This document shows, one piece after another, positions 23,721-53,253 of a DNA stretch of 64,000 nt. The notes beneath the pieces were generated by a model. It worked only from the letters and a program-made list of their open reading frames with translations. It had not been told where the DNA came from and ran no database searches. The translations under genes and the position numbers were made by a program. The first letter of the stretch is position 1. Each line of letters opens with the position of its first letter. This stretch comes from Octopus sinensis (taxonomy: Eukaryota). Location of the stretch: contig NC_043001.1 in NCBI RefSeq assembly GCF_006345805.1, forward strand, positions 80,724,001 through 80,788,000, given 5' to 3'.

Positions 23721-23751
<31 letters not shown>

Positions 23752-27109: not shown

Positions 27110-27465
27110 GGCGCAAGCGTGGGTTGTATGATGAAAACTTTTGATTCCCAACCTGGTTTTGGATTCCGTTCCACTGCGCGACACCTTGGGCAAGTGTTTT
27201 CCACTGCATACAGCTTTGGACCGACCTTGTAAGTGGATCTGGTAGTCAGAAACTGAAAGAAGCCCATCGTGTGTGTATGTGTCCGTGTTTGTTCTTCATC
27301 TCCGCTTGACAACCGGTGCTGGTTTATTTACGTCCCCGTAACCTTGTGGTTCGGCAAAAGATACTGATAGAATAAGTACCAAGTTTTGGGATGGATTTGT
27401 TCGACTAAACGCCTTATGGCGGTGCCCCAGCATGGCCGTGGCCCAATAACTGAAAGAAGTAAAAC
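27110..27465 (+). mobile_element. SINE family A, near full length, CpG retained
   Basis: Sequence gggcgcaagcgtgggttg..caccttgggcaagtg..ggcggtgccccagcatggccgtggc. Confidence 0.85.
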
Positions 27466-27565
27466 CACATACATACACACGATTTTGAACTTTTAACGCT
27501 CGAACGATTTTGGCGCTGGATAACAGTTTAATTTTTATTTACTGGTTTATCAGGACAGTGTAGGT

Positions 27566-27601
<36 letters not shown>

Positions 27602-30051
27602 CACACACACACAATATTCCATGAATTGTGGATAATATATTTACTATTTAGTTGTCAGACTGAAATGAGTGGACTGTTTGCGCCGTCATTTTTCTGTACT
27701 TCACGCGCGTACGAATGCACGTCATTTTATTCAGTTATCCTGTGTGTTCCATGGTATAAAGTGTAGTAAAAATAAAGCTGGATTCAGAGAAGAAAAAAAA
27801 GCGACTTATTTATACATTTGAATCGTAGATATGGTATTCTGGTGATCTGACGAGTTAACTTTGTTTGCATCAATTTGTGACTATACGATTGTATTGTATG
27901 ATGCTGAACACACATACGTACGTGTAATTTTGAATACTGTAATTAATATTACACACAGCGTTATGTAGGTTACGAAACGGCTGTAATCATATGAGAGTCA
28001 TATGGAATAAATAAAATCTATATTTACCTTTCACGCCTCTTCAAGCTTATATATGGGCCCACGTGAGACACAGCAACTCAACTCTCTCTCGCTTTGTATA
28101 ACTCTCAGTTTTTGAAGACCAAGTACCTTCTTCCGTATGCCCTTCTCCAGTCGAAGGAAGAACACATCTTACCCAACTACGCCCAAATCTATTGCTATCT
28201 TCTCTTTCGTCTTTCGAGAATATATGAAAGTTACCTTCATTTTGTTTTAATTTAATTTTGGAAAAAGAGTATATCATCTGCTTCGCACTTTCCCTGGTAA
28301 ATTTGTCGGGTAAAGAATCATTGCCATTTGTAATCTATTTCGTTCATTCATCCTTTAGTTTCAGCTAGCAGCTCAAATTATTTGCTCCTTTTGACCCACA
28401 GCCTTTGCAAAATATGGGGTGCTGTTGGTGGTGTTGGCTCGTAGGTTTTTTACAATTTCCATTCTAATTGTTTCTAACTCGATTTTCTTCTTTCATTGTT
28501 GATACTAGTTTCTGCTTGGAGCTCTGACCCGGATGTCTGACCCTCCACTCCACCCCCAAGGTGTCGCTAAACACCTGAAACGATTTTGAGCATTAAGGGT
28601 ACTGAATTATTAACAAACTGAATTACTGAAAAAGTGCGATAATTCAAGGCTTAAACTAGTTATTAATTTCCAGCCAAAGATCGATGCAAAAACGACTATT
28701 CACCAAACCTATTTCACATTAAATATGCTGACAATATCAATATAATATGACTGAATTTTTTTTATTTATCAATTTATCTTAGTATTTTCGTTAAATTTCT
28801 TTAAATATTTCTTATTAGAAAGCAATAATGACTCAAAGGAACGAAGGAATTATTGTTTTAAAATGAAGAAATGTTTTTACTTTTAGAAATTTGATGTCAG
28901 TTAGAATTGGGGTCAATTAGTTATCATTGACATGGAGCGATCACTGGTATAAGAAGTTTGCCGACTCCTAAGATATTCATCCTCGCTATTGTCGTACTTA
29001 GCTGCTTAAATAGAATGGTAGGGTAACTGCGCCGCTGTTATTATTCAATAGGAGCCTACTCTTTGTTCTTACAATATGCACAACGAAAAAAATAGCTAAT
29101 GAAGATCTCTATTTTTACACTAGCAGCTCTCAACATATCAGGCATGATGGTAATTCTGTGAGTGTCATAAAGAAATACTTTATAAAAATGCTAATGAGTA
29201 TCTTGTCTTTTACTTGCTTCAGCCAGCTGCCATGCTGGAGCAACAACTTGAAGAATTTTAGTCGAACGAAATCGACCTCACTACCTTTTTTTTTTTCTTT
29301 TTAAGCCTGGTACTTGTTCTGCCGGTCACTTTTGCCGAACCACTAAATGTAAACACACAAGCGGTGGGCGTGGGGTAGACACACACAAAGATCTATAATA
29401 TGCGACGGGTTTCTTTCAGTTTCTGTTTACCAAAGGCTTTGGTTGGGCTCAATGATCAAGGGTATAGTAGGAAACACTTGCCCAAGGTCCAACGCAGTGG
29501 AACAGAATCCGGAACCATGTGGCTAGGAAGCAAACTTATTACACACAGTCACGTCTATGCAAAAAAACACCCAAAACATGAAGGCTACAGGGCTAAAACA
29601 ACGTAACTCTCCACCACCACCGCCAATCAAAATCACACTAAACTGGGAAATATTTCAAATATTAACACTATTAATTTTTGGTTGCTTTTCTAAAAATATT
29701 AATAAATGGGAATACTAATTAGATGGGTCATGGTGTGCGACGGTTCAGCACTCCTAGTTTATACATTTTATCCCCGCTTTCTTGAGCTATGTGCAACTCC
29801 TCATTGTGTGTTTATGTGACTAACTGGTTATATCTGATTACTTTATAGTATGCTTGCTTTCATTTAGATGGCTGTCATTTCTGTTGGGTGTGGTTTATTC
29901 TCTTGCATGAGTGAATGTGTGCGTATACAGACACACACACACCGTACCCGCTCACCTTTCTCTTTTATAAACCTGACACTGCAACGGGTTTCACGTTATA
30001 CGAAAACATAACAGTCGCATAACTTGTCAAATGTTAAACGTAAACACACAC

Positions 30052-30100
<49 letters not shown>

Positions 30101-32087
30101 ATATATATATATTCATTTATTTATTTCTAAATAGTTTAGTGTTAACATATTTAATGTTGTGAGCATCGAATATCTAATTGGAAATAATTATGTTTTGGGG
30201 AAAGATAACGTTAGCTCAATTACTAATAATATTTTTATCATTTTCCGTAAGTAGGCAATGGCATGTTTTGTATAATTACCTCGCTTTGTAACTCTTTGGT
30301 TTTGGGTTTAGTACCACTGCGCAAGCACCTTGGGCAAATGTCTTCTATAGCCTCGGACCAACCAGTGCCTAGTGAATGAAGTTGTATGATGAAAACTGTG
30401 TATGTCTGTCGTGTGGTGGGTGTCTTTTCTGTTTGGTTGCACCTGTAGAAATTGTAAAGTTTAGTGAAAATTTTAAAATTTGGTGTATTGTAATTTTCCA
30501 TACTGAATGTCAAGGGCTAATTCACTTCTTACCAAATGTGTTTTGAGCATTTAACAAGCGCAAAATAACATTGTGGGTAAGCAGCTTGGCTTGTTATTAA
30601 GGAAACAGGCACTTATATATCTGTGGCTTTCGACTGGCTAAAATTATCCAAAATTTGCAAACTTTAACAGTATTAATTTATGTCGAAAATAAATTTCATG
30701 TCAATGATTATCATACAAAACTACATCAATACATCAAATATGAAATCAAAAGGAACAAAAACTGAATAAATTGAAAAGTGGCAGCCAAACAGAAAAGATC
30801 TTCTGCGTGTATGTAATCTTTGTGTGTCTGTTTATCCTCTCACACACACATACACACAAACCAAACCGCTTAATTTGTACCATTTTTTCTTCTACCGCTT
30901 TACAAGTAGCAGCCTACTTTTTACAACAAGACTTAGAACCGGTTTAGTAAAAGCACTCAAACTCGTATGTTTAGCCTATATCTACACTTTTATTTTATTT
31001 ATCCAAACTCTGAGATGCTAACGATAGCGCTGTTGTGAAAATTTGGACAGAGCAGTCTAATCTGAAACAGACTGAGCTGATCATCGTCATCGTTTTAACA
31101 TCTACGTTTACATGCATGGGTCTTTTCCTAAATACATAATTATTTCCCTCATTTTCCTTCCACTTTCACCCTCATCTTCCTCCCACATCATATATATATG
31201 TGTGTGTGTGTGCACGTATGTTTATATTTTACGTGTTTCTGTTATTGGACTACTGGTGTACTGCTTTGAAGGGTTTGGTTCACTAAATCTATCCCAGTAC
31301 TTAGTTCTGTCGGTCTCTTTTCTCCCGAAGTGCTAAGTTACTCGGACGTAAACAAACCAACACCAGTTGCCAAACAGTGATGGGGAACAAACGCATATAC
31401 ACTCATACTCCACATATATATATGTGTGTGTGTGTAGCACCTTGGGCAAGTGTCTTCTGCCATAATCTCGGATTGATCAAAGCTTTGTGAGTGAATTTGG
31501 CAGACGGCAACGGAAAGAAACCAGTCGCGTTTGCTCCCCACCACCGCTTGACTTGTGGTGGTGTGTACACATCCCAGTAACTTAGCGAATTGGCAAAAAA
31601 ATGCCAATAGAATAAGTACAAGAGTCGATGCGTTCGACTAAAACTTTTTAAGGCATTGCTGCAATCTAAATGATTAAAACAAGTAAAAGAGAAAATACAC
31701 CCACACGCAAACACACAACAGGCGTCTTTCAGTTTGCTAAATCCACTCACAAGGCTTTCTTTGACTCGGGGCTATAGTAGAAGCCACTTGCCCAAGATGC
31801 TACACAGTGGGACTGAACCCAAGAACCGTATGGCTGGTAAATTTTTTACCACGCAATCACACCCTCATCTCCCACATTTTCCTTTCCTCCCGCCTCATTC
31901 TCAATTTCCACCCTAATCCTTGTCTTCCTCCCATTTCGTCCTTCATTTTCATACTTATCTTTACCTTAAGTCTCTCTCATCATCATTTTGTTTTTTTCCA
32001 TGCTGTCAATCGATATATATTTAAAAGAAAAGACTCGCTGTGTACATGGCTGGATGAATTCAGTCTGATTTCATTAGCTTTACTTAC

Positions 32088-32330
32088 TGGAAGACGGCGG
32101 TGGATTGTGGCTGACGACGGGTGATGGGAGAGGACTGTTTTCTGAACGACACAGGCTCTGTCTGTGTCCACTTAATTATGCAAGTCTATCTTCGTTTCTT
32201 TCGGATGGCACCGCTCTCTTTCTCTCTCCTCCATTTCTTTCTTTTTCGTTATCTTCTTTCATTCTTTCTCTTTTTGCCCTCCATTAACCTTTTTCTCCAC
32301 ATACACTTACTCCAATCATGTCACTGATAA
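32088..32330 (-). other. Candidate non-coding first exon of a minus-strand gene (5' end uncertain)
   Basis: CpG-rich unique sequence ending in the consensus donor CCA|GTAAGT (intron starts at 32087). No upstream acceptor is evident and no in-frame ATG. Confidence 0.4.
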
Positions 32331-32469
32331 ACCGAAAGCCCTTATTAAACTAACGACTGTTGCTTGAGATTTGAGTCCTGTGATTTTTATCCACTCTCCT
32401 CTCACTGTTCTAAGTCTATGTTTCTGTCTCCCTCTCTCTGTTATTCCATCCTTCTCTCTTTCTCTCTCT

Positions 32470-32500
32470 AAACGCCGAGCGCGCGCTCAATATTGGTTCA
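32470..32500 (-). promoter_or_regulatory. Candidate promoter motifs: GAGCGCGCGCTC palindrome and CCAAT box
   Basis: 12-bp palindrome at 32477-32488 (NRF1-like GCGC core) and ATTGG at 32492-32496, embedded in (CT)n tracts upstream of the candidate minus-strand exon. Confidence 0.35.
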
Positions 32501-35079
32501 GATTTCTGTATCAAACACGACGCTTTTCTGTCTCTCTCTCACACTCTCTTTGTCTTTCATACACTTTTCCTCTCTCTCTCACATACTCTATCTCTCTTTG
32601 TCTCTCACACACATTCAAACACACACGTACACAAATATAAACAGCATAGGTTTAGATATTAAGTATTAACACTAATTTTGTTTGTGTAGCAGGTCGGACA
32701 ACCTTTATGAAGTCATTTGACTTGCTAGAAATATCAGCTAAACATTCCTCTATTTGATAGCGTAGTCGTGGCCCTAATAAATAACCATAGAAGTGCTCTC
32801 CTAGGGGTAATTTGACGCTTGACTACATCAGAGCTCTGACTCGAAAATAGCTTTATCTGTTAGCTCTGTCATATCTCCATGAAGATGGGCCACTGCGTTC
32901 TGGGTTCTAATCCAACCAATGTCAACGTTATCCTATATTTCTCCGTGGGGGCGGGTGTCGATTAAGATAAAATAAGATACGAAGAACTGTAATTGATAAT
33001 AATAAGCAAACCTTCCTCCCTTCAAAGTTTCTGGCATTGCACCAATGTTAGAAGCAGTAGATTAGTAGAATCGTTAAAGCGTTGAATAAAAGGCTTAGTG
33101 GTATTTATTTCCATTCTTTACATTCTGAGTTCAAGTCCTACCAAGGCCAGCTTTGCTGACATCCTTCTGGTTTCAGTAAAACAAAGCACCAGTTAATTAA
33201 CTTTCCTCCTACCTCAATAGTGTTTTTTTTTTTTTACCTCCATTTAAAAAAAAATTAATTGGCAGTACTTGAGCTGAACTACGCTCGAGAAATGATGTTC
33301 AGGACTTCATTATCCTGAATAGCTTCACGAAATTTGAGGATCATTTGCCTGTTGTTTCTGCCAAGTTAAGCAACCATATAAGATCCAGATTTTCCCTACC
33401 TATTTGCATTGAAAAGGCCCGAAAAAGTTTCTAGACGTTACCACTTGGCTTGCATTTTTTTTTATCGTGTGGACTAATTTGAGAAAATTTGGTAGCTATA
33501 TCTAACAGATCGAGTTACCACGTAAATCTTCATTATTTAGTCCCGTGAAAGTTCTAACTGAATAAAATGGAGGGTCAAACGGCATTCCTGCTTTGATTGC
33601 CTATCTTTTTTGGTAATATCTATATTCCCTTATCAAGACGGCAGGTGTGTGACTGGGAGGTTATTTTTATTTGGTTGGCATTTCTAGCCGGTCGGACGAC
33701 CGCATAGGGGATCCTCCTGGTTGCCATCCGAAGTATCAGCTATTTCATATTGTTTGGTGCCTTATATGTAACGAAATGTGAGTGTATATTATAGTAGTGT
33801 GTGAATGTTTACGCGCGCGTGTATTTATATATACACACACACACACACACACACTTCCCCTTCATTACTTTCTTCGAGCATCAAGCATATATATTCACCG
33901 TGAACGTCCTTTGGATTTCTGTTGTTTTTTGTGTTTGAATTCGTCGTTCGTTATCGATTATCCTGTGTGTGTGTGCCCTCACACACAGTGAACAACAAGC
34001 ATAGTTACATGTATGACACATGGTGTGTTTTACACAATCGTAAACCAAAACCCTTTTATATTACTCACTCGACATATTCTTAAAAGAAAGAAATATTCCC
34101 AAAGAATTCCCTCAATTGATAAGCATCTGTCCTTCCTATCAGCCAGTTCCAAACCACAAACCTTCAAAGCTTTCTTCTGCATTCAAGCCTGAAAACACAG
34201 CATCAAGAGAGGTTCAAGCAGATGCCTGTATATAAGCAGTATCTATCTATATCGTATATCGACTCTGTTTGCGTGACATGTCACCTTCTATTATTACTAC
34301 CACCACAACCTCTTCTTAATGGGGTATTTTCGCTATTTTTACGTCCATGCTTCCATGAAAATGGTTTTTCCTTGGAGCAATCGTTTTTTTCTTCTTTTTT
34401 TTATCATTATTATTACTTCAAGACCTTTTGCTGCTTGCTAAGTCATTCAAGTGTGAAGTTTGCAGTTTGTTTTTAGAAAGGCAAGTAGATTTAATATGCC
34501 TTTATTTCCCACGATAATAATACAGAGGGCGTATAAAGATTTAGACTTGCGATTTGTATTTGGTTAATAATCCGGCACCTTAAATACACCTACCTCTTAA
34601 CACCTCCTATACATCATATGTATGTAATGTACGAATACACTAGCTTTGGATTTTTTTCTCATTTGATTCGCAAAGCCCGATTTACTTTTCTTTCTTTTAT
34701 ACAAAAGGTAGAAGAAAATTAATAGGATCTGATTATCTAAAATTACTTGAAATGTTAATCTGTAGTGGTTAGCAATTTTTTTGTTATTATTGATTTTTCC
34801 AAAAATTCATGTGATTTGGGTAATTAACTTGCAAGATCACATCTCATTTTATCTATTTCATTGTTTGTCATTGTACTGTGGCTGTGCTGGGGCCACTGCA
34901 CTGAAAGGTTTTAGTTTGAAGGCATATTAACTCCAGTACACGACTGCAGTGCTTTTTTTTTTAAAGTCTGTTACTTATTGTATTGAAAACATCAGCCGAA
35001 CTGCGTAGCTACGGGTACGTAAACAAACCACCACCGGTTGTCAAATGGTTGTGGTGGCAAACATCAAGATGCATACATC

Positions 35080-35119
<40 letters not shown>

Positions 35120-35659
35120 TATATATATATAATTTCAGCAAAACAATTAAGATTCAAATGAATTCAAATGAATATGGTACTTAACTTAGATGCATCAGAA
35201 TTCTTTATGGTATTAACCATAAAATTATGTGGGGTGATTATAACCAAGAATGGATCATTCTTGTTACTTTTTTCTTGGTTATATATAATGAGAATCTGGG
35301 GCTTTTGAAAATGTACCCGAATCTCAAAACATACAGTCGTTTTTACATTTTGTTATAGATTTATTAAAATATTAAACCGGTTTCGACATTCGGTCTGTTT
35401 GGAGCTATAGTAGAAAGACACTTAAGTCAGAAACTACACGGCTGCAAAGCGAGCTCCTTAACCACGCACGAGTTCTGTGAAGAACACGGAAAAGATGTCT
35501 AGATTTATAGTTTGTGAGGATCTCTGCCAACAATGAAAACTATTTTAGATCACGATGGGGGTCCTCTCAACCAACTAGAAATAACATCGAATCTTCAAAT
35601 CTCACCTTTTATCTTTTTTTTTTCTTCTCTTCTCTCGGTCTTGTTATGTCTGTACTTTA

Positions 35660-35800
35660 CATTTGATAACGTGATGCTGTGTCGTCTACGCTTTCCTTTT
35701 GATCACACGATTGTGTATCGTCTGGTATTTCCATTTGATCACGTGATGCTGTGACGTCTACTCTTTCCATTTGATCACGTGATACGTGTCGTCTGCTAGG
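35660..35800. promoter_or_regulatory. Four 36-bp tandem units carrying (A)TCACGTGA(T) E-boxes
   Basis: Unit CATTTGATCACGTGATGCTGTGTCGTCTAC.CTTTC starts at 35660, 35696, 35732 and 35768. The perfect ATCACGTGAT palindrome is present in units 3 and 4. The repeat is certain; regulatory function is inferred. Confidence 0.6.
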
Positions 35801-36427
35801 TGTGCCTTCGAACAATGTATTTCTCCGTTCTGCCGTTACCCTTGTTTCCCCCTCTCCCCACACAACCTCCAGTTACTCTTTCGTCTCGTTTTCCCCCTTT
35901 CCAGATTTTTACATACATACACGTACGTATACATTCTTTCTAATAAATGTTTCTTGTGTGTCGTCTATTTTGAATTGAAGTTTAATGAGCAGAATAAATG
36001 CGAATTAAAGTATATCTCAAACATACACGCCATTTACTTTTTGTTGGTATCGTCTACATATAAATTACAATATCTGTTTATGCTTCTGTTAGTGTCTATA
36101 TCTATCTATTTCTCAGTACCTCTACTTATTTATCAGTATATCTATTCCTTAGACTGTCTATTTATCTCTCAGTATATTTATCAGTCTCTCTACATCTCTC
36201 AGTATATCCATCCTTCCATCTGTCTGTCTGTCATGTATCTGTCACTCATAATATATACGAATAAGCGCCGTAAAGTTTTAATAAAATATATTTTACAGAC
36301 TGCAAAACTAATCTAACTTTACCGAACTCTCAAGTAAAGTGGATAGATATGTTTATATTAAAAGTTGACTGACTACTCCGAGTTCTTATCCCCCACCCCC
36401 GGGGGTGCTGAACTGGTATCTATCAAC

Positions 36428-36519
36428 ATGGGGTTGTCAATGAAAAGCATAGCCATACAGAGAAAAAGTTTATCTCGGAAAACTAAATCAAAAATGGAGG
36501 AAAAGAGTTTATGTATAAA
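36428..36519 (+). CDS. Candidate first coding exon (MGLSMKSIAIQRKSLSRKTKSKMEEKSLCI-K, phase 2 donor)
   Basis: ATG at 36428 with in-frame ATGs at 36440 and 36494, a strong donor AA|GTGAGT at 36520, TATA-like tatattaaaag at about 36354, and CpG decay starting about 1.7 kb downstream. Product not recognised; could be a uORF in a UTR exon. Confidence 0.4.
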
Positions 36520-38552
36520 GTGAGTATTCTCGTCGACCCTAACGTATAAGACTCTAACAGCTAAATTAATGCCGCTGGACTTCCCATACAAATAATTTAT
36601 TTTTAGTGATGAATGCATGTGTAGGACTAGCTACATATTTTTTTTTTTTATGTGTGTGCACGTGCAAATGTTGACAAGAAAAAATTGCTGCAAATGTTAG
36701 CCACAAACTCAAATCAAGTATTTACGTACCTCACGCTTCTGGATCAGTTACCTTCGCCATCTCTTAACAGTAGAACCCACCTTGGTAGGCGACATGCGCA
36801 CCTTGGCATCAAATTAAATATTTTAAAAACTTCGCATATGCATGCATGGCTGTGTATCGCTTGAAACCGTTGTTTGTGTATGCACGTACCCGTGGCTTAG
36901 CGGTTCGGCAAAAAGGTCAGACAGAATAAGTACTGAGCTTTAGAAAAAATTAAATACTGGGGTCAATTGGTTCGACTAAATTCTTGAAGGCAGTACCCTA
37001 CCATCAGTTTAATGACATGCGTATGTATGTGTTCATACACACGTTTATATGTGTATATATGCATATCTCCGTGTGTCTAATTACCTACACATACACACTC
37101 AAATGAAATGTATTTTCTTTTCCCATTCAGTATTTTCTTCTTTCATTCATTCTCTATATGGAAATATAATTTTTTTTTTCCTGAAACCTTTATAATTCAC
37201 AGCCGCCATTATATAGCAGACGATACATCAAAAAGATATTTTCCTCATGACATATTTCCGTTTCTGTGTATTTTTAACTTCGTATATTTGATTGTTTCTT
37301 TCTTTTTCTTTTTTTCCTTTGTATCATTTCTTTTAAAAATGGTATTTTCTTAAATATCTTGCTTTTTATTTAAACGATTATTTTCGGTACGCTATATTTC
37401 TTTTTCCTTTACATTTTTGCTACTAAATAATTCAGCATGTCATATATACATACAAATATATATGTGTGTGTGTGTATATGTATAAAAGCTTTGAAACCGG
37501 ATTTAAACCTTAATCTTTTCATCAATTGATATTTTTCCCTTTTGTTATTCTAAAGGATTTTTCTATGAGTGTATGTGCATATATATATTGTGCCCAAGGC
37601 TTGCAACAATTTTATGTACTCTTTTATACAATTACAGCATGTATGTGTGTGTTTATATATATAAAGTCAAATCTCTTTTATGCTTTCACAACATAGTTAC
37701 CGTGCTGCGAATATTCAACGTCGATGATATTCATTCAAATTTTGCAGTGATAGAAGGTCCACCATAACCTTCGTACATACTCTAAACTTGGCTCGTAAAT
37801 TTTAGGGTTGTATTTTTTAAAATACAATATATGTAACTTCATAAAATACACTTTTGGAAGCTATCATATTTTTACTTAATTTCGCTGGATATATGTCGAA
37901 CAGAAAACTATGAGGGTGATTGCACAGAGCTACTCTTTATGTAATCCTGTTCACCTTACATTTATTTCATTCGTATAAATGAGACCCTCGGGGGAAACAA
38001 AATATATTGTCAGAATCACGGTTATTAAAACTCTTTGTTCTAAGTAGCCTGATAACCGTGTGTGTGTGTGTGTGTGTGGCTGACGTCATAAAAATTGATA
38101 AGCTTTTCAAGGGAATATGAAATCTCTTTTGGAATAATGGATCTTGAAGCACATATTATAAACGTCTGTATTATATTGGATGTAAAATGCTCTCATGCAA
38201 ACACCCAATGTACATTGTATCTTGTATATTGCATATGTTTATATACCAGAACCTTGTGAATAGATTTGGCAGGGCAAAACTCTAAGCCTATTATATTTAT
38301 AAGTGTATGTGTGTTTGTGTCTCCTTGTCTTGACATTGCTTGGTAGTTTATATATAAGTGGTCACTGCCATGCCCAGCAGTGACATTAGTTTCTTATATT
38401 CTACAAAAACATGTTTGGCCATGCAGAAAAAATATTACCTTGCTTGGAAACAGGTAAAGATTGGCAACAGGTTGGGCATCCTACTGCAAAAAAACTGGCC
38501 TCAATAAACACTATTTGGAAAAGTGGACATAAAAGCAATAATGATGATATTT

Positions 38553-38601
<49 letters not shown>

Positions 38602-38677
38602 TATGCAGGCTGAAACTTCGAAGTCACTGTCAGCACTATTGTTAAAGAATAATAAATATGTAGTCTATAAAAAGTTT

Positions 38678-39003
38678 TGAGTAAGCCTTCTGGAATATAA
38701 GGCATGCTTTTTCTCCAAAAAATTCCTCCTAAAAGTCACTCTGAACCTTGCGAGTGGAAGGTTAGGTTATAAGTTGACTTGGTTAGCGTTATTAATGGTG
38801 GAGGTTAGTGGTGATATTTGGTAGCGTTAAGTAACTTAGCCTACCATAATAGCTTACCAAAGGGCATCAATCTAAATTTTCATGGATCCTATACATTAAA
38901 ATGTCTGAGACATTCTGAGTTAGCTGCAGTTATTTCTTGATTTGACAGATTAGGTCTTCCAAGATTAAGGGGTGCCTTCCTTATATGCTTGAAAATATGA
39001 TTA
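38678..39003. mobile_element. pogo/Tigger-like MITE, CpG-decayed
   Basis: Left end gtaagccttctggaatataaggcatgc and right end gtgccttccttatatgcttgaaaatatga are degenerate inverted repeats of the CCGTATTTTC..ATATAAGGCGCAC type. Confidence 0.5.
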
Positions 39004-39006
39004 TAC

Positions 39007-39196
39007 ATGAGGGGGTGCTGAAAAGCTCCTGGTTTTAAAGGTGTCACAAAATGCCTGCTTGGAGGCCCAACTTTTGAGTTCTTTTACAGGGCTTAGAAAA
39101 GCTGAAGGACTGCTGCAATAAGTGTGTGAATGTAAGAGGAGAATATGTTGAATAAAATCATTAACTGATCCTCCTGTATTTTAGTATCCCCTCGTG
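39007..39196 (+). mobile_element. mariner-derived MITE (about 190 bp)
   Basis: TIRs TGAGGGGGTGCTGAAAA and TTTTAGTATCCCCTCG. Internally retains the transposase C-terminus KDCCNKCVNVRGEYVE*. Confidence 0.75.
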
Positions 39197-40529
39197 TGTT
39201 TGTATGTGTATATATATATATATATATATATACTTGCTTGTTTTTTTCCACCATAATTAGACACAAGATATTCTTTCTTGTAGCTCATTTTTTGATACTG
39301 TCATGTGCCATCCAAATCTTTGAGACTGTCTGTCTGTATGCTAGATACTGCAAAATAAGTTTTAATAATAGATATATATATTCATGTGCATATCTTTCCA
39401 ATCATTTTGCTATCAACTGTTTCTGAATTCATAAACCCTCACTAATCAAGCTGGCTAATTTGTGTTCTCGGTGATAAATCAAAAGTCAGAAAAATGAGAC
39501 AAGATGTCCTTACTGCTGAAAGATACTATATATATCCATGGAGATGTTGGAGACTTGAACCAGCAACAAGGACTACCAAGTTTGACAGTTGTTTTATATT
39601 TTGTATCTTTGCCACATTCTGATTTTACTTGTTTGTTCATCTGCATATATACCCATCTGCTTGCTTGTTATTCTCGTCATTTAAATCACAAATGATTTGA
39701 ACCGACATACTGTCCACTGTGTCTATATGTGCTGTGTATGTATATACATGTGTGTGCATATATACGTGTGTGTATATGTGCACACACACAATGAGTTAGA
39801 ATGTGTCAAATATATATGTACATACATATGCACATAACGAGAAGGTGATAACAGAGGCACACTTTTAAACATATGTGTGTGTGTATATGTACTTCTGTGA
39901 GTGTGTGTGTGTATATTTGTGTGTGCATATAACGGATAAGAATACAGCATATATATATATACACACACACATTCTGGGGAGATGATAACACAGGCACACT
40001 TGTAAACATAGTCACATGTGTTTGTGTGTGCATATACATTTATATATATATATAATGGCTAAGAATGCATCACACACACACACACACACACGCACACACA
40101 TAGAACAAGGTGGAGATAACACACTCACGCAAATGCATAGGAAGTGTGAAAGAGGATGTATATATATGAGTGAGACAGCCAGTAGGTAAAATCTGTCACC
40201 ATAGATTATTAACAAGACATCATAAAACAAAATGCATAGGGGAGAGAGGGAGAGAGAGACCATAAGACAGAGTGAGACCATAAGACGGCAAAAAAAAGAA
40301 GACAAAATAAAGCAAAAAACAAAACGCAAAATCAGATTGACTGACAGTTGAGTAACTATAGGGAGATACACATGAATATATAATTAGGGTTCATTTTTGT
40401 TTCAAGATGTCGTACATGGTGTACAATGTGAAGAACTTTATTAGATTTTTACCATAGAGTAACATCATATACTGATGAAGAGTGGCAATGATATAGGCAT
40501 CCAAATGGTACAGCAATACTGAAGCCTAT

Positions 40530-40829
40530 CTGCCTGCCTGCCTACCGACCTACCTACCTACATTCCTACCTACCTACCTACCTACCTTTCTGCCTACCTA
40601 TCTCTCTGCCTACTTACCTATCTGCCTGCCTACCTATCTATCTACGTACCTTTCTATCTACCTACGTACCTTTCTATCTACCTACATACCTACCTATCTA
40701 TCTACCTACCTATATATCTACCTACCTACCTATCTACATACCTACTTACCTATCTATCTATCTACATACCTACCTACCTATCTACCTACTTATCTACCTA
40801 CCTATCTACCTACCTACCTACCTACCTAC

Positions 40830-40860
<31 letters not shown>

Positions 40861-40885
40861 CCTACCTATCTATCTGCCTACCTAT
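40530..40885. repeat. Compound (CCTA)n/(TCTA)n microsatellite
   Basis: Directly visible. Confidence 0.95.
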
Positions 40886-42509
40886 TTATATGTATATATC
40901 TAATATAGTAGCTAACATTTGAGCTAGCATATGATGATATATCTCCCAGTGAATGATGTATGATTGCTCAGTAATGAGGGACAGAAGCACTGCAGTAAAT
41001 TTGTAGAAATAAGAAAGCAATATTCAAACAAATGCACATTGAAATGAAAAGTCATAAGGTACAAACAAGAGTATTGCATGCACACACACAGACACAGACA
41101 CACACACACACACACACACACACTCACTATCTGCAGGGGAAAAAATCCTACAATGTAGCTATTTTTGTTTTCATTATTTACAATTTAACTATGTACTGAT
41201 AAAAATTCCATAATACAGCTTATTATGGAGTTAATTTGTTTTTGTTATTTACAATTTATGTACAGATAAAAATTTTACAATGTATCTAATTTGTTTCTAG
41301 TATTTACAATTTTAATATGTACAAAGAATTTTATTCAATTTGATGACTATACATATGTATTTTCAGCCCTGAAGATGTTTTACACTGTCAATTATAAGCT
41401 ATACACATCCACACAATCACAACACAACGCACACTCACACAGACAGACAGAGATAGAGGGATAGATAGAGAGAGGTAGAGATAGATAGAGGGATATATAG
41501 AGAGATAGATTCATTCAATCCAGAGACGTGCCATTGAGGTAGGCAAGGTAGGTAGTGCCTACCTTGAATAAAATAGATTGATAGCAACATTTTCCTTTTA
41601 TGGCAAAATATGCACCTAATTCAATAAAACTATGAAGGATAGTCTGATTACTATGCATAAAAGGCAACATGTTTTATTTGTTTGTAGATAGGTAGGCATA
41701 ATTCAGCCCTGCTTTTCAATCTCAGTATTTAAGCTATGCATAGTACTGTTGTAGTACATGCGCTGAGAACATTTCTACAGCACTGTTTTCTTTATGTGCT
41801 ATAAAAGCAGAAAGAGATCTACCTACAACTCAGTCACATGTCTGCGTTTCAGTCATTTTTTTATGCGTTTTACTACATAAAAGTCACCAGCAGTCTACCC
41901 TAAGTAATTACTGATGGTACGTGCCTGATACATTTCAATCATTGGACTGCAGACGTGGACACTACCTTGAAGGATTTTAATTGAACAAATTAACTAAAGT
42001 ACTTTTATTTTTTCTAAAGTCTGGTACTTATTCTGTTGGTCTTGTTTTGCTGAAATGCTAAGTTACAGGGACATAAAGCACTACCAGCTGATGTGCATTT
42101 GGGAAGGGGGCAAAGAAACACAATTGCATGCAAATATACATAATTTATTCAAAAGGTGTCAAAATTATAATGATTTGGGGTTAACTGATGTGGGGTGAGC
42201 ATATCCACAAACATCCATTTTGTGATTTTCCAGTTTTCCATTTGTTCCTTCATCATCCTCATGTGCCACATTTTAGCATCATTTATAAATACACACACAC
42301 ACATGTAAAATTCTTGTTATGTGTGTAATAAACTAGGTGCTCCAGCATGACTGCAGTGACATGATTAAAAAGAGGAAGATAAGTACATATAATTTGTGCT
42401 CATGTTGACTTGCTGCCTAAAAGTCTACTTCTAATGTAAGAATAGAGTGCTACTCTTAATGTTGATTACCGATCATTTGCAAGGAAACGCACTGTCTGCA
42501 ATCTATCCT

Positions 42510-42543
<34 letters not shown>

Positions 42544-42762
42544 ATATATATATGCACGTGCATGCACACACACACACACACACTTGTATGTATGTATGTA
42601 TGTAAATATGTTTTTAAAAATGGTTATATTCTTATGTTTGAAGTCTATACAGTCATCTGACAAGAACAGTTCCTTTCAAATTGATGTAATGTTTTCATTA
42701 ATCAATTAAAGGAATTGCTTGAAACAGCCGTAATGAATTGACACCTGTACATCTTTGTTACT

Positions 42763-42795
<33 letters not shown>

Positions 42796-45162
42796 CATAC
42801 ACACTCACACAGGCTTCTTTCAGTTTCCATCTACCAGATTTACTCACAAGGCATTTCCTTTTTGTACTTCCTCCTCCCACTGACCTTATCTAGTTGGGTG
42901 GTCCCTCTCTCGCAAGAGCTAAGTAAAATTCCATTTCAGAAAGCTAGAGAGAGAAGGCATTTGCTGTTGATATATCAGAAATGCTCAAGCTCTGCTTTTT
43001 GCTAAACACCACCAATAACATTTGTGTGAGTATGTTACCAGTTCTGGGAGTGTGAAAATGGCATCTGTGATGCTCCCTTGTATTAGTGGATCAGAGAGGA
43101 GTGCTTAGTCTGTCTGTATACTTTTCACATAAATAAAAAAGTAAAAACAATCTTGAGTTGACCTGTCTCTGTGTACCTGACTGACTTCTTCTCATACCCC
43201 CACCTTAACATTCATATGAACACACACACACATACATACATGCACCCTCTTACACTACTTCAGATCTTATGTTGTATTCAACCATCCCATCTCCCACTGT
43301 TTTTGGAGTGTGTTTGTCCTCTTCACAACAAGCCTTTCATCTTTTCATCCCTCAGTTTTACAAAACTTCTTTCCCCACTCTATTACTAATTCTTTCTTCA
43401 TCTGTTCCCCCACTAATTCTCCTATCTTCAAAGGCACCACTCCTTCTACACCCCAACCTTACTGCTGCCACCTTCCACTCCAATTTCTCATTCATTTTTG
43501 TGTGCACCTTTTTGCTTTTTTGTTGTGTGTGTGCTTCATTCAAATTAACATCTTAAAAGCTAGTGAACACTCTCCATTGGTTGTTTCATTGGGTCTCATT
43601 TGTTTTTGTTTTTATTGTTCAAATTCTGGATAGCTCTGAACCAGCAGGTATCAATCATAATGATTAAAGACATGCCAGCCATGATCATCAAACCTGAATT
43701 TTTCAGAAATAGGCACTGGCATGTTGTGTGGTTATAAGAAGCTTGCTTTGCAACCACTGATTTCAAGTTCAATTGCCACTACTGCTCAGCGTCATCAAGA
43801 GGTTTCTTTTACTATAGCCTTGAGCTGCTCAATGTCTTGTAAGTGATAGACAAAAAGCTTTGTGGAAGCCTATCATGGTTAGGGTTAGCCTGTATGGTCA
43901 CAGTCCAATGACTAGTAAAAGATTGTGTGTGTTTGTATCATTTAGCTTTTACACCCATGGAAGGCAGATGTTAAACAATGATGATTTTTCAGTCAAAGAA
44001 GGGATTTTGTCACATGAATCAACAACAGCACTTTACTCTTTTAAAGCATAGTATTTGTGCTGAACTGCTAAGTTATGATAACATAAACCAACCAACACTA
44101 GTTGTCAAGTGGTAATGCTGATCAAACACACACACACACACACAATGGGCTTCTTTGTGTCCATTTACAAGGCTTTGATTGGCCTAGAACTATAGAAGAC
44201 ATTTGCCCAAAGTGCCACACAGTAGGACTGAACCTTGAACTATGTGGTTAGAAAGCAAACTTCTTACCACATAGCCATGCTTCAGAAAAGAAATTTATAA
44301 TTTGGCAGTTGAAATAAAGCCACATTTCCTCTCTAAATACCATAATTGGAAAAGACAGAAAGGAGAAAATGACAAAGAGGAAGCAGAACAGCAAAAAAGA
44401 AAAAAGAAAAAAGAGGTAAAAATTTGAAGATAGCTTTAAGCACAAGAAGAGGATGTTTGAAAAAGCTAAGAAAGTGAAGAGAGAGTTTATTAAAAAAATG
44501 AAATAGGGTGGAGCGGAGAAAATTATAAGAGATTATATTGAAGAGAATAAGGCGGTGATTTCGTGTATAAAAACATTAAAGATGTCATAACAGTATGAGT
44601 TTCTGTGTGTGGCGTGTAGAATAGGTACCTTTTCCTTATGTGCCAATGAGTAAATATATATATATATATATATATATATAATGTGTATATGATTGAAAGA
44701 GTGCTCGAATAAATAAGAAAGAATATGTGTGTGTCTGTCTGTTTTCCTTTTTTTTTTTTTTTGGTTGCATAGAAGTGAGTGAATCTGGGAGGAAAAATAC
44801 AAGGAGTAAAAAATCCATCTCTTTGTACGTTCGCACTTGTGTATATATGCATATATGTTTAAGTGAGAAAGATATCACTGAATAAAGAAATAGAGAGAGG
44901 GGGGGAAGAGAATGTAAAGAACCTCTGTGTGTGTGTGTGTGTTATTTCTGTGTCTCCTCGCACACAATGCACTTAATATAACAAGTTTACACTGTGGGTA
45001 GTAAGTCAGCACATTTAAGTGTAGTTCCCAAGTGTCTTCTTCTATAGACACAGGCTGAGCAAAGGCTTGTGAGTGGATCTGGTACACGGAAACCAAATGA
45101 ACCACCTCTCTTTTTCTCTTTCTCGCTCTCTCTCTTGTGTGGTTGGAAAGGAAGCTTCTTAA

Positions 45163-45378
45163 CCCTTTTAGCATTTAAACCAGCGATATCCAGCCAAAAT
45201 ATTCTCTGTTTTATGTTCAAACTGGCCAGATCTGGTCTCTCACACTTACCCTACATTGTCATTCTAAAAAATTAAGTTACTTCATCAAAGTCTCATAGCT
45301 ACAAGATAGTGTATGATTAATTCAAAACAATGGGAATAAACAAGTATTACTATTGACAGTAATGTACACACTAAAAAG
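45163..45378 (+). mobile_element. piggyBac-like MITE with TTAA flanks
   Basis: TTAA-CCCTTTTAGCATT at the left end and ACTAAAAAG-TTAA at the right. The same family recurs at about 48105-48697 (minus, split), 56620-56828 (minus), 59523-59690 (plus) and 60470-60678 (plus). Confidence 0.8.
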
Positions 45379-46014
45379 TTAATCACAGCGATGCGCACAC
45401 TCACACACACACACACACACACTCACATATATTGTGTATACCCTTGATTGTCTATGAGCATCACCATCATTCAAATGATGTCTTCCATGTAAACATGTTT
45501 GGCTATGGTGAAATATTACCTCACTTGGAAATATGTAAAGATTGGCATTCAGCTGCAGAAAATCTGCTTCAACTAATTTCATCTGATCCCCACAATCATG
45601 GAAACATGGATGTTAAAATGATGATGATGAATGAACCGAAGATCCACAAGTCAATACCCTTCCCAGCTTGTGCAAAATTTGGAAGGAATTTCTGTTTAAG
45701 TTTTAATCCTATACTTTCTTTTGTTAGAAATAATTGTTATATTGTAGTCAACCTACTCGAGCTGCAGTTTAACAACTATGTCTTGTCTAAATATAGAGCT
45801 TAACTAAAGGCACTGTAGTTATGACAAATCTACTTAAAGAAGTTCCTGTTGGCAAAGCAGGTTATTTTTGTAGGAGTTAGGTGTTTTCCGCTAACTGTTG
45901 ATTAATAGGAAGCCATGATAACTTCTGTTGAAGTAGGTGGGTAGACAGTGTAAATGTTGGCGTCAGCCTCTATACTAAAGTGTAAAAGAAATCATTATTA
46001 TTCTCAGGGTGACG

Positions 46015-47375
46015 AAGGTGACAAGCTGATAGAATCATTAGCACATGGGTCAAAATACTTAGCAACATTTCTTCTGGTTTTACATTGTGAGTTCAAACTC
46101 CACCAAAGTTGACTTTGCCTTTCATCCTTTCAATAAAATAAAGTGCAAATTGAACACTGGTAGAAGTAATCAAGTAGCTCCCTGCTCCTAAAATTACAGG
46201 CCTTGTTCCTATAGCAGAAAAAATTATCAGAATAGCTGAATGGCAGAAATACTAAAATACTTTAAGTTCTGAGTTCAAATTCTGTTATAGTTGACTTCTT
46301 TATTGATATCTACAAAATATGTACCAGTCAAATTCTAAAATTAACTATACCCTTCTTACCAGATGACAAAATTTGAGAAGCAGTGGATAAAATGCTAGCA
46401 GTATATTTAGCCACAGCTCTTTTACATTTTGAATTCAGATCACTCTAAGGTGGACTTTGCCTTTCATTGTGACTGAACTGGTCACATTTGATTGACTGTC
46501 CTCTTCCTTCACACAGATTCTGGTCATGTTTTCTATTAGAAATTATGAGGCACTGAATTGGTAGAATTGTTAGGATAAAAAGAAAAATGCTTTGTTGTAT
46601 TTGTTCTGGCTCTTGGCATTCTGATTTGAAATCTTGTCTTTCCAGGGTCAACAACAAAAATGTACTTTTTAAGTACTGGGATTGATGTAATGAACTAACT
46701 CCCACCTTCAAAATTTCAGACCTTAAAAGAATTATTGTTGTTGTTATTTTGTTAACATGCTGGACAAAATGATTTGTGGCATTTTGTCTATCTTTACATT
46801 CCAAGGTCAAATTCCACCAAGGTCGACTTTGCCTTTCATCTTTTCAGGGTCAATAGAATAAGAACCAGTCAAGCACTGGAGTCAATGTAATCAATTTAAC
46901 CACTTCCATTAAAATTGCTGGCCTTGTGCTAAAACTTGAAACCATTAGTATTATTATTAAGGCGGCAAGCTGGCAGAAATGTTAGCATGCCAGGCAATTT
47001 ACTTAGCGGTATTTCGGCGGCGAGCTGGCAGAAACGTTAGCACGCCGGGCGAAATGCTTAGCGGTATTTCGTCTGCGTTACGTTGTGAGTTCAAATTCCG
47101 CCGAGGTCGACTTTGCCTTTCATCCTTTCGGGGTCGATAAATTAAGTACCAGTTACGCACTGGGGTCGATGTAATCGACTTAATACCTATGTCTGTCCTT
47201 GTTTGTCCCCTCTGTGTTTAGCCCCTTGTGGGTAATAAAGAAATAGAAATAGGTATTTCGTTTGTTTTTATGTTCATTCCACTTAGGCCAACTTTGCCTT
47301 TCATCCTTTTGAGGTCAATGTAATCGACTAGCCCCTTCCCCCAAAATTTCAGGCCTTGTGCTTATAATAGAAAGG
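46015..47375 (+). mobile_element. Head-to-tail train of about 7 SINE-B copies
   Basis: Successive copies start near 46015, 46235, 46362, 46548, 46760, 46961 and 47016, all in the same orientation. Confidence 0.8.
47016..47251 (+). mobile_element. Very young full-length SINE-B nested in an older SINE-B
   Basis: Intact head ggcggcgagctggcagaaacg, about 18 CpGs, and TSD GGTATTTC at 47008-47015 and 47252-47259. Confidence 0.92.
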
Positions 47376-48237
47376 ATTATTATTATTATTACTGCTACTG
47401 TTGTGCCACTAAAAAATAATTTGTGTTGCTTTCACAGTAATAGCTGCTTTTAAGCTCTGACAGTTGAAATACTTGCTTATACATTCACACACACATTAAG
47501 ACTTTGACATACGCTAACGCATTCATCCTAAATGTAATGGTTCCTCAAAATTTAGAAGATAATATCTAGTTTACATTTCATCATATCTTTTTTTAAATTC
47601 TTTTACTAGCATGGCTACTTAGACAGAAAGAAATCCAGGTTTCACGTTTTCTTTCTGGTCTTTTTTATACTATTTAAAAAAATTTTTGTTTCCACTTGAA
47701 ACAAGAATAAACATAAAATTTCCTGAGATTCCGTTTGCCATTGTCATCTGAAACAGTCTGAATGTCTGTCAAGTTGTTGCTGCCAAGATGACTAGGCATC
47801 GCTGCCAAAGTGGTTATTTCTCTTTTTAATTAGTAAGTGGAAGCTTTATGTCCTGGTTGCATAGTTAATTTGTTATTTGGTCATGTGGAATGGTAAAGCA
47901 TATTAAAGCTACATAGAAAGTAGAGTACAGTAGTTAGCGGGGATATCATTTTCAAATGCATACTTTTAGTATACTTTCTTTTCTTTTTTCTTTTTTAAAT
48001 TATATCTGTTATATGTGAGCTGATCCACATAGGAAAGTTTGTGTAAAATTTCAGTATCATACAATCATGATTATCAACTTTTATTTTAATGTTGACCCCA
48101 ACTTTTATCCTTTACCATTCAGATTATAAATCAATAATAATGCTTATTTATTCACATTGTTTTGAATTAATCATATATTATCTTGTAGCCTTGCAATTTC
48201 AATAACTTTACTGTATATTTTTAGAATGTCATATCTC

Positions 48238-48300
<63 letters not shown>

Positions 48301-53150: not shown

Positions 53151-53198
53151 TATACTACTACTACTGCTACTACTATTGCTGCTACCACCACCACCACC

Positions 53199-53207
<9 letters not shown>

Positions 53208-53253
<46 letters not shown>

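What the first reader, a model, noticed from the sequence alone, without database searches (positions are those of the whole stretch)
37500..38700. Sharp CpG-depletion boundary at about 38.2 kb: a fossil edge of germline gene-body methylation
Seen: from 1 to about 38.1 kb CpGs are common and SINEs keep them (gccgaaccgc, gtcgatttg, cccgtcgtat). From about 38.2 kb to the end the same motifs read gctgaactgc, gtcaatgt and cctattatat, and CpGs are rare outside young insertions. Established: 5mC deamination gives CG>TG/CA, and mollusc methylation is mosaic, concentrated in gene bodies and starting downstream of the TSS. Inference: the boundary predicts a plus-strand gene starting 1-2 kb upstream and shows that identical repeats are methylated according to location rather than family.
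Basis: partly seen in the sequence, partly recalled or inferred. Interest (0 to 1): 0.7.

Follow-up and report, generated by a model that had tools for sequence, protein, structure and literature searches.

The report
Edge of an anciently methylated domain
At 38.16 kb this octopus-type sequence switches within a few hundred bases from CpG-rich to CpG-poor DNA, the mutational footprint of a germline DNA-methylation domain edge; the step is real, but this kind of feature is already known in invertebrate genomes.

Summary
CpG observed/expected is 0.85 for 1-38,165 and 0.22 for 38,166-64,000. There is one change point, at 38,163 (support 38,057-38,269). A pure step fits best, and the transition is at most about 0.6 kb wide. 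G+C and GpC o/e barely change, while TpG and CpA rise on the depleted side.

Two SINE families have copies on both sides, with the same non-CpG divergence and the same non-CpG C/G transition rate. They keep 38-47% of ancestral CpG sites on the left and 6-14% on the right (p about 1e-7). The only N gap is at 372-471. The boundary lies in unique DNA, and both sides share repeat families, one of which is also found in Octopus vulgaris.

The best explanation is the edge of a long-standing, positionally stable germline-methylated domain in a mosaic cephalopod methylome.

No coding exon, Pfam domain, tRNA or Rfam RNA was detectable anywhere in the window, so gene, strand and TSS remain unknown.

Sharp methylated-domain borders, CpG depletion as their fossil record, and methylation of repeats by location are already documented in Ciona, oyster and octopus. 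It is a clean example of a known phenomenon, and interest is low.

The parts
1..38163 (.). CpG-replete domain (CpG o/e 0.85), inferred to be unmethylated in the germline over evolutionary time
   Evidence: SINE copies here keep 38-47% of ancestral CpG sites.
38057..38269 (.). Support interval of the CpG change point (ML 38,163). The last clustered CpGs are at 38,019, 38,057, 38,084 and 38,163; the next is at 38,619.
   Evidence: likelihood scan and CpG positions. (step is the best fit; width <= about 0.6 kb). (no other copy in the window matches the stretch between the last left-side match, ending 37,663, and the first right-side SINE fragment, from 38,217, so the change point lies in unique DNA).
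38166..64000 (.). CpG-depleted domain (CpG o/e 0.22; 0.19 without three young SINE-B copies). It runs to the window end and is inferred to have been heavily methylated in the germline for a long time.
   Evidence: CpG-context transitions are 0.41-0.49 per base against 0.14-0.16 for non-CpG C/G.
38081..38088 (.). TGACGTCA, a full CRE/ATF palindrome. It occurs once in the window, about 80 bp left of the change point. It could be a promoter-proximal or barrier element, but this is untested.
38217..38548 (+). Decayed composite SINE (SINE-A 3' part plus downstream module) lying wholly on the depleted side.
18739..18900 (+). Reference SINE-A copy on the CpG-replete side: 6 of 9 ancestral CpG sites retained, non-CpG divergence 0.084
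58218..58381 (-). SINE-A copy of similar age on the depleted side: 0 of 9 CpG sites retained (5 TG, 3 CA), non-CpG divergence 0.076
47020..47249 (+). Young SINE-B subfamily copy inside the depleted domain that still keeps 13 of 16 CpG sites. It causes most of the local CpG bump at 46-49 kb.
   Evidence: 92% identical to the copy at 49,126-49,356; distinct shared 3' tail.
372..471 (.). The only assembly gap (100 N), about 37.7 kb from the boundary

Best explanation
Position 38,163 (+/- about 100 bp) is the edge of a chromatin domain that has been heavily CpG-methylated in the germline for a long time. The domain runs from 38.2 kb to at least 64 kb. It abuts at least 38 kb that has stayed unmethylated, in the mosaic methylome of an octopod cephalopod.

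Mechanism:
- Established chemistry: 5-methylcytosine deaminates to thymine, so methylated CpGs are lost as TpG/CpA several times faster than other sites.
- Shown here: everything inside the domain has drifted to a vertebrate-like CpG o/e of about 0.2. This includes unique DNA and SINE copies that landed there. The same SINE families outside the domain, at the same age, keep about 40-47% of their CpGs.
- Shown here: younger SINE-B copies inside the domain are only partly decayed.
- Inferred: methylation therefore continued into the recent past.
- Inferred: because the transition is a step at most about 0.6 kb wide with no gradient, the edge has stayed in essentially the same place during the whole time needed to erase about 95% of the CpG sites of SINEs that are about 15% diverged.
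- Inferred from what is known of Ciona, oyster and octopus methylomes, not shown here: the methylated domain is most likely the body (intron or UTR) of a constitutively expressed gene whose coding exons lie outside this window. The sharpness of the step mildly favours its 5' side, which would mean a plus-strand gene.
For: - Size, uniqueness and significance of the step. Sharpness.
- Unchanged GpC o/e and near-equal GC, with a reciprocal rise of TpG and CpA.
- The depletion is equal in unique DNA and in repeats.
- SINE-A CpG retention 39/102 vs 4/72 at non-CpG divergence 0.171 vs 0.150. SINE-B 34/73 vs 34/245.
- The non-CpG C/G transition rate is the same on both sides (0.139-0.157), while CpG-context transitions are 0.22-0.28 left and 0.41-0.49 right.
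- Graded decay of the younger SINE-B copies: 13/16, 6/16 and 5/15 sites kept.
- The same repeat families occur on both sides, and one is shared with Octopus vulgaris.
- Literature: Ciona sperm DNA consists of domains that are about 100% or 0% methylated, with sharp boundaries; 83% of methylated DNA overlaps genes, and transposons are often unmethylated (PMC3827831). The Octopus bimaculoides methylome is binary and enriched in the bodies of about 14,000 genes, with low TE and intergenic methylation (PMC9476566). In oyster, methylation rises sharply after the TSS and declines slowly after the TTS (PMC4378273).
Against: - No methylation data were available, so the methylation state is inferred only from its mutational footprint.
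- No exon, promoter or transcript evidence links the depleted domain to a gene.
- 26 kb without any detectable coding exon is compatible with a large octopus intron, but also with a non-genic methylated domain.
- The right side is richer in interspersed repeats (28% vs 17% of bases) and holds two same-orientation SINE-B clusters. Repeat-nucleated methylation is therefore not excluded.
- The ORF packs left out repeat-derived, low-complexity and lower-scoring ORFs, ORFs under 24 aa everywhere, and ORFs under 45 aa left of 36 kb. The packed queries are also insensitive to remote homologues, so tiny or fast-evolving exons could have been missed.
- Read-level support for the assembly across 38.0-38.3 kb could not be checked.
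Confidence: 0.85

Rival explanations
1. The edge is the 3' end of a minus-strand gene, or an internal edge within a transcription unit that spans both sides. It is then not a 5' edge just downstream of a plus-strand TSS. The methylation-footprint reading is the same; only the gene geometry differs.
For: - No TSS, first exon or CpG-dense promoter peak is detectable within several kb upstream of the boundary.
- A mild TpG>CpA skew on the plus strand is present from about 20 kb to 64 kb, on both sides of the boundary. If it is transcription-linked, it would suggest a unit that crosses the edge.
Against: - Oyster meta-gene profiles show a sharp rise after the TSS and only a slow decline after the TTS (PMC4378273). 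A step at most 0.6 kb wide fits a 5' edge somewhat better.
- SINE-A orientation on the right is 10 minus to 3 plus, against 8:8 on the left. This is a weak hint of antisense bias relative to a plus-strand gene.
- A CRE palindrome, TATAAA and CCAAT lie at 38,081-38,210, but these are common motifs noticed after the fact.
Confidence: 0.35
2. The depleted domain is not a gene body. It is a non-genic methylated block, for example one nucleated by SINE-B clusters or satellite-like arrays, a long non-coding RNA unit or a piRNA-type locus.
For: - No coding exon is detectable in 26 kb.
- Interspersed-repeat content is higher on the right (28% vs 17%).
- There are two same-orientation SINE-B clusters, at 46.0-47.4 and 52.0-53.15 kb.
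- Octopus satellites and intergenic repeats carry somewhat more methylation than repeat-free intergenic DNA (PMC9476566). In oyster, SINEs and young repeats are themselves methylation targets (PMC4378273).
Against: - The depletion is uniform over the whole 26 kb and is as deep in unique DNA (0.22) as in repeats (0.23). No internal change points surround the repeat clusters.
- The same SINE families are barely affected on the left.
- In Ciona and octopus most methylated DNA lies in genes (PMC3827831, PMC9476566).
Confidence: 0.15
3. The step is an assembly artefact. Two regions of the same genome that are not really adjacent, one methylated and one not, were misjoined at about 38.1-38.2 kb.
For: - The step is extremely abrupt.
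- A (GT)9 run lies at 38,058-38,078 and a (TG)22 run at 38,556-38,599. Assemblers can misjoin at such repeats.
Against: - There is no N run at the site; the only gap is at 372-471.
- Clustered CpGs continue about 85 bp past the (GT)9 run, so the switch is not at the microsatellite.
- The change point itself lies in unique sequence.
- Abrupt methylated/unmethylated borders are the documented norm in such genomes (PMC3827831).
- Both sides carry the same repeat families at the same divergence, which rules out a cross-species chimera.
Confidence: 0.05
4. The CpG difference has a cause other than methylation, such as different age or origin of the two segments, a GC-content (isochore) boundary, or biased gene conversion.
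For: None found beyond the step itself.
Against: - GC differs by only 1.5 points, and GpC o/e is 1.01 vs 1.03.
- Age-matched SINE copies have equal non-CpG divergence and equal non-CpG C/G transition rates on both sides. Only CpG-context transitions differ.
- The losses appear as TpG/CpA.
Confidence: 0.02

Closest known systems
Methylated/unmethylated domain borders of the mosaic Ciona intestinalis genome (Suzuki et al. 2007, as cited in Suzuki et al. 2013, PMC3827831; Simmen et al. 1999, as cited there)
   Same: Ciona sperm DNA is either about 100% or 0% methylated, with sharp boundaries. Methylated domains mostly cover gene bodies. Transposons are methylated or not according to where they lie. 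The pattern found here is the sequence footprint expected of such a border.
   Different: This case is a cephalopod and rests on sequence only. No bisulfite data and no gene model are attached. The unmethylated flank is very long (at least 38 kb), and the methylated flank holds no detectable exon in 26 kb, reflecting the much larger octopus genome.
Gene-body methylation in molluscs: Crassostrea gigas (PMC4378273, PMC2996979) and Octopus bimaculoides (PMC9476566)
   Same: The methylome is binary and mosaic, with methylation concentrated in the bodies of a subset of genes. In oyster, methylation rises sharply after the TSS. In octopus, TEs are largely unmethylated outside genes. CpG o/e is a standard proxy for historical germline methylation.
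   Different: Those papers give genome-wide averages, whereas this is a single locus resolved to about +/-100 bp. In oyster, SINEs and young repeats are reported as methylation targets in their own right. Here the location effect dominates, and left-side SINEs show only a 1.6-1.8-fold CpG excess.
Vertebrate CpG-island edge ('shore')
   Same: It is a junction between CpG-replete unmethylated DNA and CpG-depleted methylated DNA (o/e about 0.2), produced by the same deamination process.
   Different: The polarity of default and exception is reversed. Here the unmethylated state extends for at least 38 kb at 36.6% GC, which is not an island: it fails the usual GC >= 50% and length criteria. The methylated state is the bounded domain.

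Membership tests
Fossil (mutational) footprint of a germline-methylated domain edge in a mosaic invertebrate methylome | Abrupt, statistically significant step in CpG o/e without a comparable step in G+C or GpC o/e | tested here: met
   CpG o/e 0.85 vs 0.22, GC 0.366 vs 0.351, GpC o/e 1.01 vs 1.03. LLR 208, single change point, permutation maximum 56.
Fossil (mutational) footprint of a germline-methylated domain edge in a mosaic invertebrate methylome | Lost CpGs reappear as TpG/CpA (deamination products) | tested here: met
   In unique DNA, TpG o/e rises 1.13 to 1.35 and CpA o/e 1.13 to 1.27. At ancestral SINE-A CpG sites on the right, 52 of 72 are TG or CA.
Fossil (mutational) footprint of a germline-methylated domain edge in a mosaic invertebrate methylome | The effect is CpG-specific in age-matched sequence (same repeat family, same background divergence) | tested here: met
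   Non-CpG C/G transitions are 0.139-0.157 on both sides. CpG-context transitions are 0.22-0.28 on the left and 0.41-0.49 on the right. Retention tests give p=2.8e-7 and 2e-8.
Fossil (mutational) footprint of a germline-methylated domain edge in a mosaic invertebrate methylome | The organism belongs to a lineage with a mosaic, gene-body-type methylome | tested here: met
   A SINE-derived ORF matches 'Hypothetical predicted protein [Octopus vulgaris]' at 62% identity. The Octopus bimaculoides methylome is mosaic (PMC9476566). The exact species of the window was not determined.
Fossil (mutational) footprint of a germline-methylated domain edge in a mosaic invertebrate methylome | A present-day 5mC difference across the edge in germ cells | not testable with these tools
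   No bisulfite or nanopore data were accessible.
Gene-body methylation (methylated domain = transcription unit) | The depleted domain coincides with an annotated or expressed gene, with a TSS just outside the domain | tested here: inconclusive
   Three packed-ORF searches gave no hit at E<=0.01. Ten ORFs checked individually have no significant Pfam match, and there is no tRNA or Rfam match in the window. Exon-free introns of 26 kb are plausible in octopus, so absence of exons neither confirms nor refutes. No RNA data were available.
Gene-body methylation (methylated domain = transcription unit) | Co-location with H3K36me3 and exclusion of H3K4me3 | not testable with these tools
   No chromatin data.
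Vertebrate-type CpG island | Short (0.2-3 kb) GC-rich (>=50%) CpG-replete island in a depleted background | tested here: not met
   The CpG-replete side is at least 38 kb long at 36.6% GC. There is no distinct CpG-dense peak near the edge.
Isochore / GC-content boundary | A step in G+C content that explains the dinucleotide change | tested here: not met
   The GC difference is 1.5 points, no larger than expected from the CpG loss itself (about 2.2 CpGs lost per 100 bp).
Scaffold misjoin | A gap, repeat or clipped-read signature at the junction | tested here: inconclusive
   There is no N run at the site, and the junction is in unique DNA. Read support is not testable here.

The most novel reading that the evidence does not exclude
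The methylated block may not be an ordinary gene body. It would then be an exon-free, non-coding methylated domain of at least 26 kb, with its edge pinned for a very long time to within a few hundred bp by a sequence-specific barrier. One candidate barrier is the only CRE palindrome in the window, 80 bp from the change point. If so, single-genome CpG-decay 'clocks' in SINEs could be used to measure how stable methylation-domain borders are in cephalopods, and which elements anchor them.
Probability: 0.12. Interest if true: 0.45.

Novelty: already known. Interest (0 to 1): 0.2.

Why it matters
The locus is a clean, well-resolved illustration that CpG o/e profiles can place a methylated-domain edge to within about 100 bp from sequence alone. 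It also shows that interspersed repeats work as internal, age-matched controls.

It could serve two practical purposes:
- a calibration case for predicting methylated domains in cephalopod assemblies;
- a starting point for asking how stable such borders are between Octopus species.

It does not change what is known. Mosaic methylation, sharp borders, CpG depletion as their footprint, and location-dependent repeat methylation are all established for Ciona, oyster and octopus.

Tried and rejected
1. Finding the predicted gene by homology.
   - I packed stop-to-stop ORFs, filtered for repeats and low complexity, into three queries against the 5.8-billion-protein collection.
   - The queries were: ORFs >=45 aa from 37.9-64 kb, ORFs of 24-44 aa from 36-64 kb, and left-side ORFs >=45 aa including everything non-repeat from 35.8-37.95 kb.
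   - None gave a hit at E<=0.01.
   - Caveat: such long concatenated queries are weak for remote homologues, and the packs left out some ORFs.
2. Pfam on ten individual ORFs gave nothing significant. The set included the repeated element with ORF remnants at 13.3-13.9 and 22.6-23.1 kb, which I had guessed to be a transposase relic. That guess is unconfirmed.
3. tRNA scan and Rfam: no hits.
4. An amino-acid-composition score found no protein-like ORF anywhere in the window.
5. Strand of transcription from the TpG-vs-CpA asymmetry. The right side has a +0.048 skew (p=0.007), but the same sign is seen over 20-37.5 kb on the left. It is therefore not boundary-specific, and I rejected it as evidence. 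TG vs CA at SINE-A sites in genomic orientation is 22:30, not significant.
6. SINE orientation bias. SINE-A is 3 plus to 10 minus on the right, but SINE-B is mixed and clustered. This is too weak to use.
7. A CpG-island-like promoter peak near the edge: none.
8. Identifying the SINE by full-text sequence search in the paper library: no match.
9. Poly(A) hexamers near the edge were considered and rejected as uninformative. In DNA this AT-rich, about one AATAAA per kb per strand is expected by chance (my estimate from base composition).
Full report
OBSERVATION

- CpG o/e is 0.85 (1,085 CpGs) for 1-38,100 and 0.22 (177 CpGs) for 38,200-64,000.
- G+C is 0.366 vs 0.351, GpC o/e is 1.01 vs 1.03, and (TpG+CpA) o/e rises from 1.17 to 1.32.

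A two-rate likelihood scan over all cytosines puts the change point at 38,163-38,165. The log-likelihood ratio is 208, and the 2-log-unit support interval is 38,057-38,269. CpGs are dense up to 38,163, and the next one is at 38,619.

Recursive segmentation finds no further change point in either flank. In 2,000 shuffles of 500-bp blocks the largest LLR was 56, against 202 observed.

Fitting a sigmoid instead of a step shows that a pure step fits best. The 95% support limit for the 10-90% transition width is about 0.6 kb.

The window's only N run is at 372-471.

IS IT REPEAT-DRIVEN, AGE-DRIVEN OR COMPOSITIONAL?

No. After masking, unique sequence goes from 0.88 to 0.22 and interspersed repeats from 0.78 to 0.23. 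TpG and CpA o/e both rise on the right. The 1.5-point GC drop is no more than the loss of about 2.2 CpGs per 100 bp would produce.

Self-comparison shows the same repeat families on both sides.

For a tRNA-derived SINE (SINE-A), a profile search recovered 29 copies.
- At nine ancestral CpG sites, left copies retain 39/102 and right copies 4/72 (Fisher p=2.8e-7).
- Non-CpG divergence is comparable, 0.171 vs 0.150.
- 52 of the 72 right-side sites read TG or CA.

A second family (SINE-B, 27 copies) gives 34/73 vs 34/245 (p=2e-8).

The non-CpG C/G transition rate is the same on both sides (0.139-0.157). CpG-context transitions are 0.22-0.28 per base on the left and 0.41-0.49 on the right, which is near saturation. 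Age and background mutation are therefore matched, and only CpG-context decay differs.

Left copies still show 1.6-1.8 times the background rate at CpGs. Three causes are possible: ascertainment of the consensus, a context effect, or some family-directed or transient methylation as reported for oyster SINEs (PMC4378273). Location is the dominant determinant but not demonstrably the only one.

YOUNG INSERTIONS

The CpG bump at 46-49 kb comes mainly from SINE-B copies at 47,020-47,249 (13/16 CpG sites kept) and 49,126-49,356 (6/16). A third copy of the same kind lies at 53,667-53,892 (5/15).
- The three share a distinct 3' tail absent from the left-side copies compared.
- The first two are 92% identical to each other, so this is a younger subfamily.
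- Without these copies the right side is at 0.19.
- Their graded decay implies that methylation of the domain continued into the recent past.

WHAT LIES AT THE EDGE

- The change point lies in unique DNA, in the stretch between the last left-side repeat match (ending 37,663) and the first right-side SINE fragment (from 38,217).
- A decayed composite SINE (38,217-38,548) lies entirely on the depleted side.
- A (GT)9 run ends at 38,078.
- The only TGACGTCA (CRE/ATF palindrome) in the window is at 38,081-38,088. TATAAA (about 38,158) and CCAAT (about 38,205) follow it. These are common motifs noticed after the fact, so I record them as a lead, not a finding.
- There is no CpG-island-like peak near the edge.

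GENE CONTENT

I could find no gene.
- The window contains no tRNA and no Rfam family at gathering score.
- By composition, no ORF looks protein-like.
- Three searches of the 5.8-billion-protein collection with packed ORFs gave no hit at E<=0.01. They covered ORFs >=45 aa from 37.9-64 kb, ORFs of 24-44 aa from 36-64 kb, and left-side ORFs >=45 aa including 35.8-37.95 kb.
- Pfam on ten individual ORFs gave nothing significant.

An exhaustive search of the representative library with a SINE-derived ORF did find relatives. One is 'Hypothetical predicted protein [Octopus vulgaris]' at 62% identity. This establishes two things.
- The window comes from an octopod cephalopod.
- The underlying protein set holds at least one Octopus vulgaris protein, so near-identical exons of an annotated octopus protein should have been caught if that proteome is covered.

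Within this window, then, the depleted domain appears to be non-coding DNA. Such a stretch fits a large octopus intron or UTR, but it also fits a non-genic methylated block.

The ORF packs had limits. They left out:
- repeat-derived, low-complexity and lower-scoring ORFs;
- ORFs under 24 aa everywhere;
- ORFs under 45 aa left of 36 kb.

Tiny exons could therefore have been missed.

STRAND

The plus-strand TpG>CpA skew on the right (+0.048, p=0.007) is also present over 20-37.5 kb on the left. SINE-A orientation is 10 minus to 3 plus on the right and 8:8 on the left, but SINE-B is mixed and clustered. Neither result settles the direction.

The only argument for a 5' edge comes from the literature. 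In oyster, methylation rises sharply after the TSS and falls slowly after the TTS (PMC4378273).

MECHANISM

- Established: 5mC deaminates to T, so methylated CpGs decay to TpG/CpA.
- Shown here: the decay is CpG-specific, location-specific, independent of repeat family and age, and ends at a step.
- Inferred: the right-hand domain has been almost fully methylated in the germline for long enough to erase about 95% of the CpG sites of SINEs that are about 15% diverged.
- Inferred: the edge has not wandered by more than a few hundred bp in that time, since otherwise a gradient of intermediate CpG o/e would be seen.
- Inferred from other species: the domain is probably a gene body. In Ciona, 83% of methylated DNA overlaps genes (PMC3827831), and octopus methylated CpGs are enriched in introns and exons (PMC9476566).

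COMPARISON WITH WHAT IS KNOWN

- Ciona sperm DNA consists of about 100% or 0% methylated domains with sharp boundaries. Transposons are methylated or not according to location (PMC3827831 and its references 11 and 24).
- CpG o/e is the standard proxy for historical germline methylation in oyster and other invertebrates (PMC2996979, PMC4378273).
- The Octopus bimaculoides methylome is binary, gene-body-centred and TE-poor (PMC9476566).

This locus is a clear instance of that phenomenon. It is not a CpG island, an isochore edge or a cross-species chimera. A same-genome misjoin cannot be excluded without reads, but nothing points to one.

VERDICT

- The 'fossil methylation edge' reading is strongly supported by sequence evidence (confidence about 0.85).
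- The gene-body label is plausible but unproven.
- The specific gene, strand and TSS prediction is untested.
- Novelty: already known.
- Interest: low (0.2).
- The most novel reading still open has a probability of about 0.12. It is a non-genic, barrier-anchored methylated domain whose stability could be measured from SINE CpG clocks.

Noticed in passing
window 38081-38088 (with 38158-38163 and about 38205): The only TGACGTCA (CRE/ATF palindrome) in the 64 kb sits about 80 bp left of the CpG change point, followed by TATAAA and CCAAT. It could be a promoter-proximal or barrier element. About 0.7 occurrences per window are expected by chance (my estimate from base composition), so only its position is notable.
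   Followed up: partly
window 46023-47376 (+) and 52052-53145 (-): SINE-B fragments form two clusters of 5-8 partial copies in the same orientation, like satellite arrays derived from a SINE. A younger SINE-B copy (47,020-47,249) is nested in the first cluster. SINE-B is about four times denser on the depleted side (20 copies in 26 kb vs 7 in 38 kb).
   Followed up: partly
window 38166-64000 vs 1-38165: SINE-A copies are 10 minus to 3 plus on the depleted side and 8:8 on the CpG-rich side. This may be an orientation bias relative to an unseen transcription unit, but the numbers are too small to say.
   Followed up: partly
window 13332-13853 and 22661-23128: Two copies of a repeated element carry ORF remnants (for example ...KARIMAAFTNLNKETIQKNCR...). 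By eye I took them for a transposase relic, but neither Pfam nor the protein collection gave a significant match.
   Followed up: partly
window 35641-35794: A CpG-rich tandem repeat (36/72-bp unit, about 4 copies, containing TGACGTC) lies 2.4 kb upstream of the boundary, in one of the more CpG-dense stretches of the left side (o/e 1.25). Its function is unknown.
   Followed up: no
window about 20000-64000: A mild but fairly consistent plus-strand excess of TpG over CpA extends across both sides of the methylation edge. It may reflect strand-asymmetric mutation over a unit larger than the depleted domain, or relics of (TG)n microsatellites.
   Followed up: partly
window 1-38165, SINE-A and SINE-B copies: Even on the CpG-rich side, CpG-context transitions in SINE copies run 1.6-1.8 times the non-CpG C/G transition rate (p=6e-5 for SINE-A). 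This could be low-level or transient methylation of SINEs, as reported for oyster, or a bias in how the consensus was inferred.
   Followed up: partly
whole window: Microsatellites are extremely dense (88 TRF rows; (TCTA)n, (TA)n, (AC)n, (CCTA)90 at 40,525-40,884, and about 400 bp of (AT)n at 13,877-14,276). There is no detectable coding exon in 64 kb.
   Followed up: no
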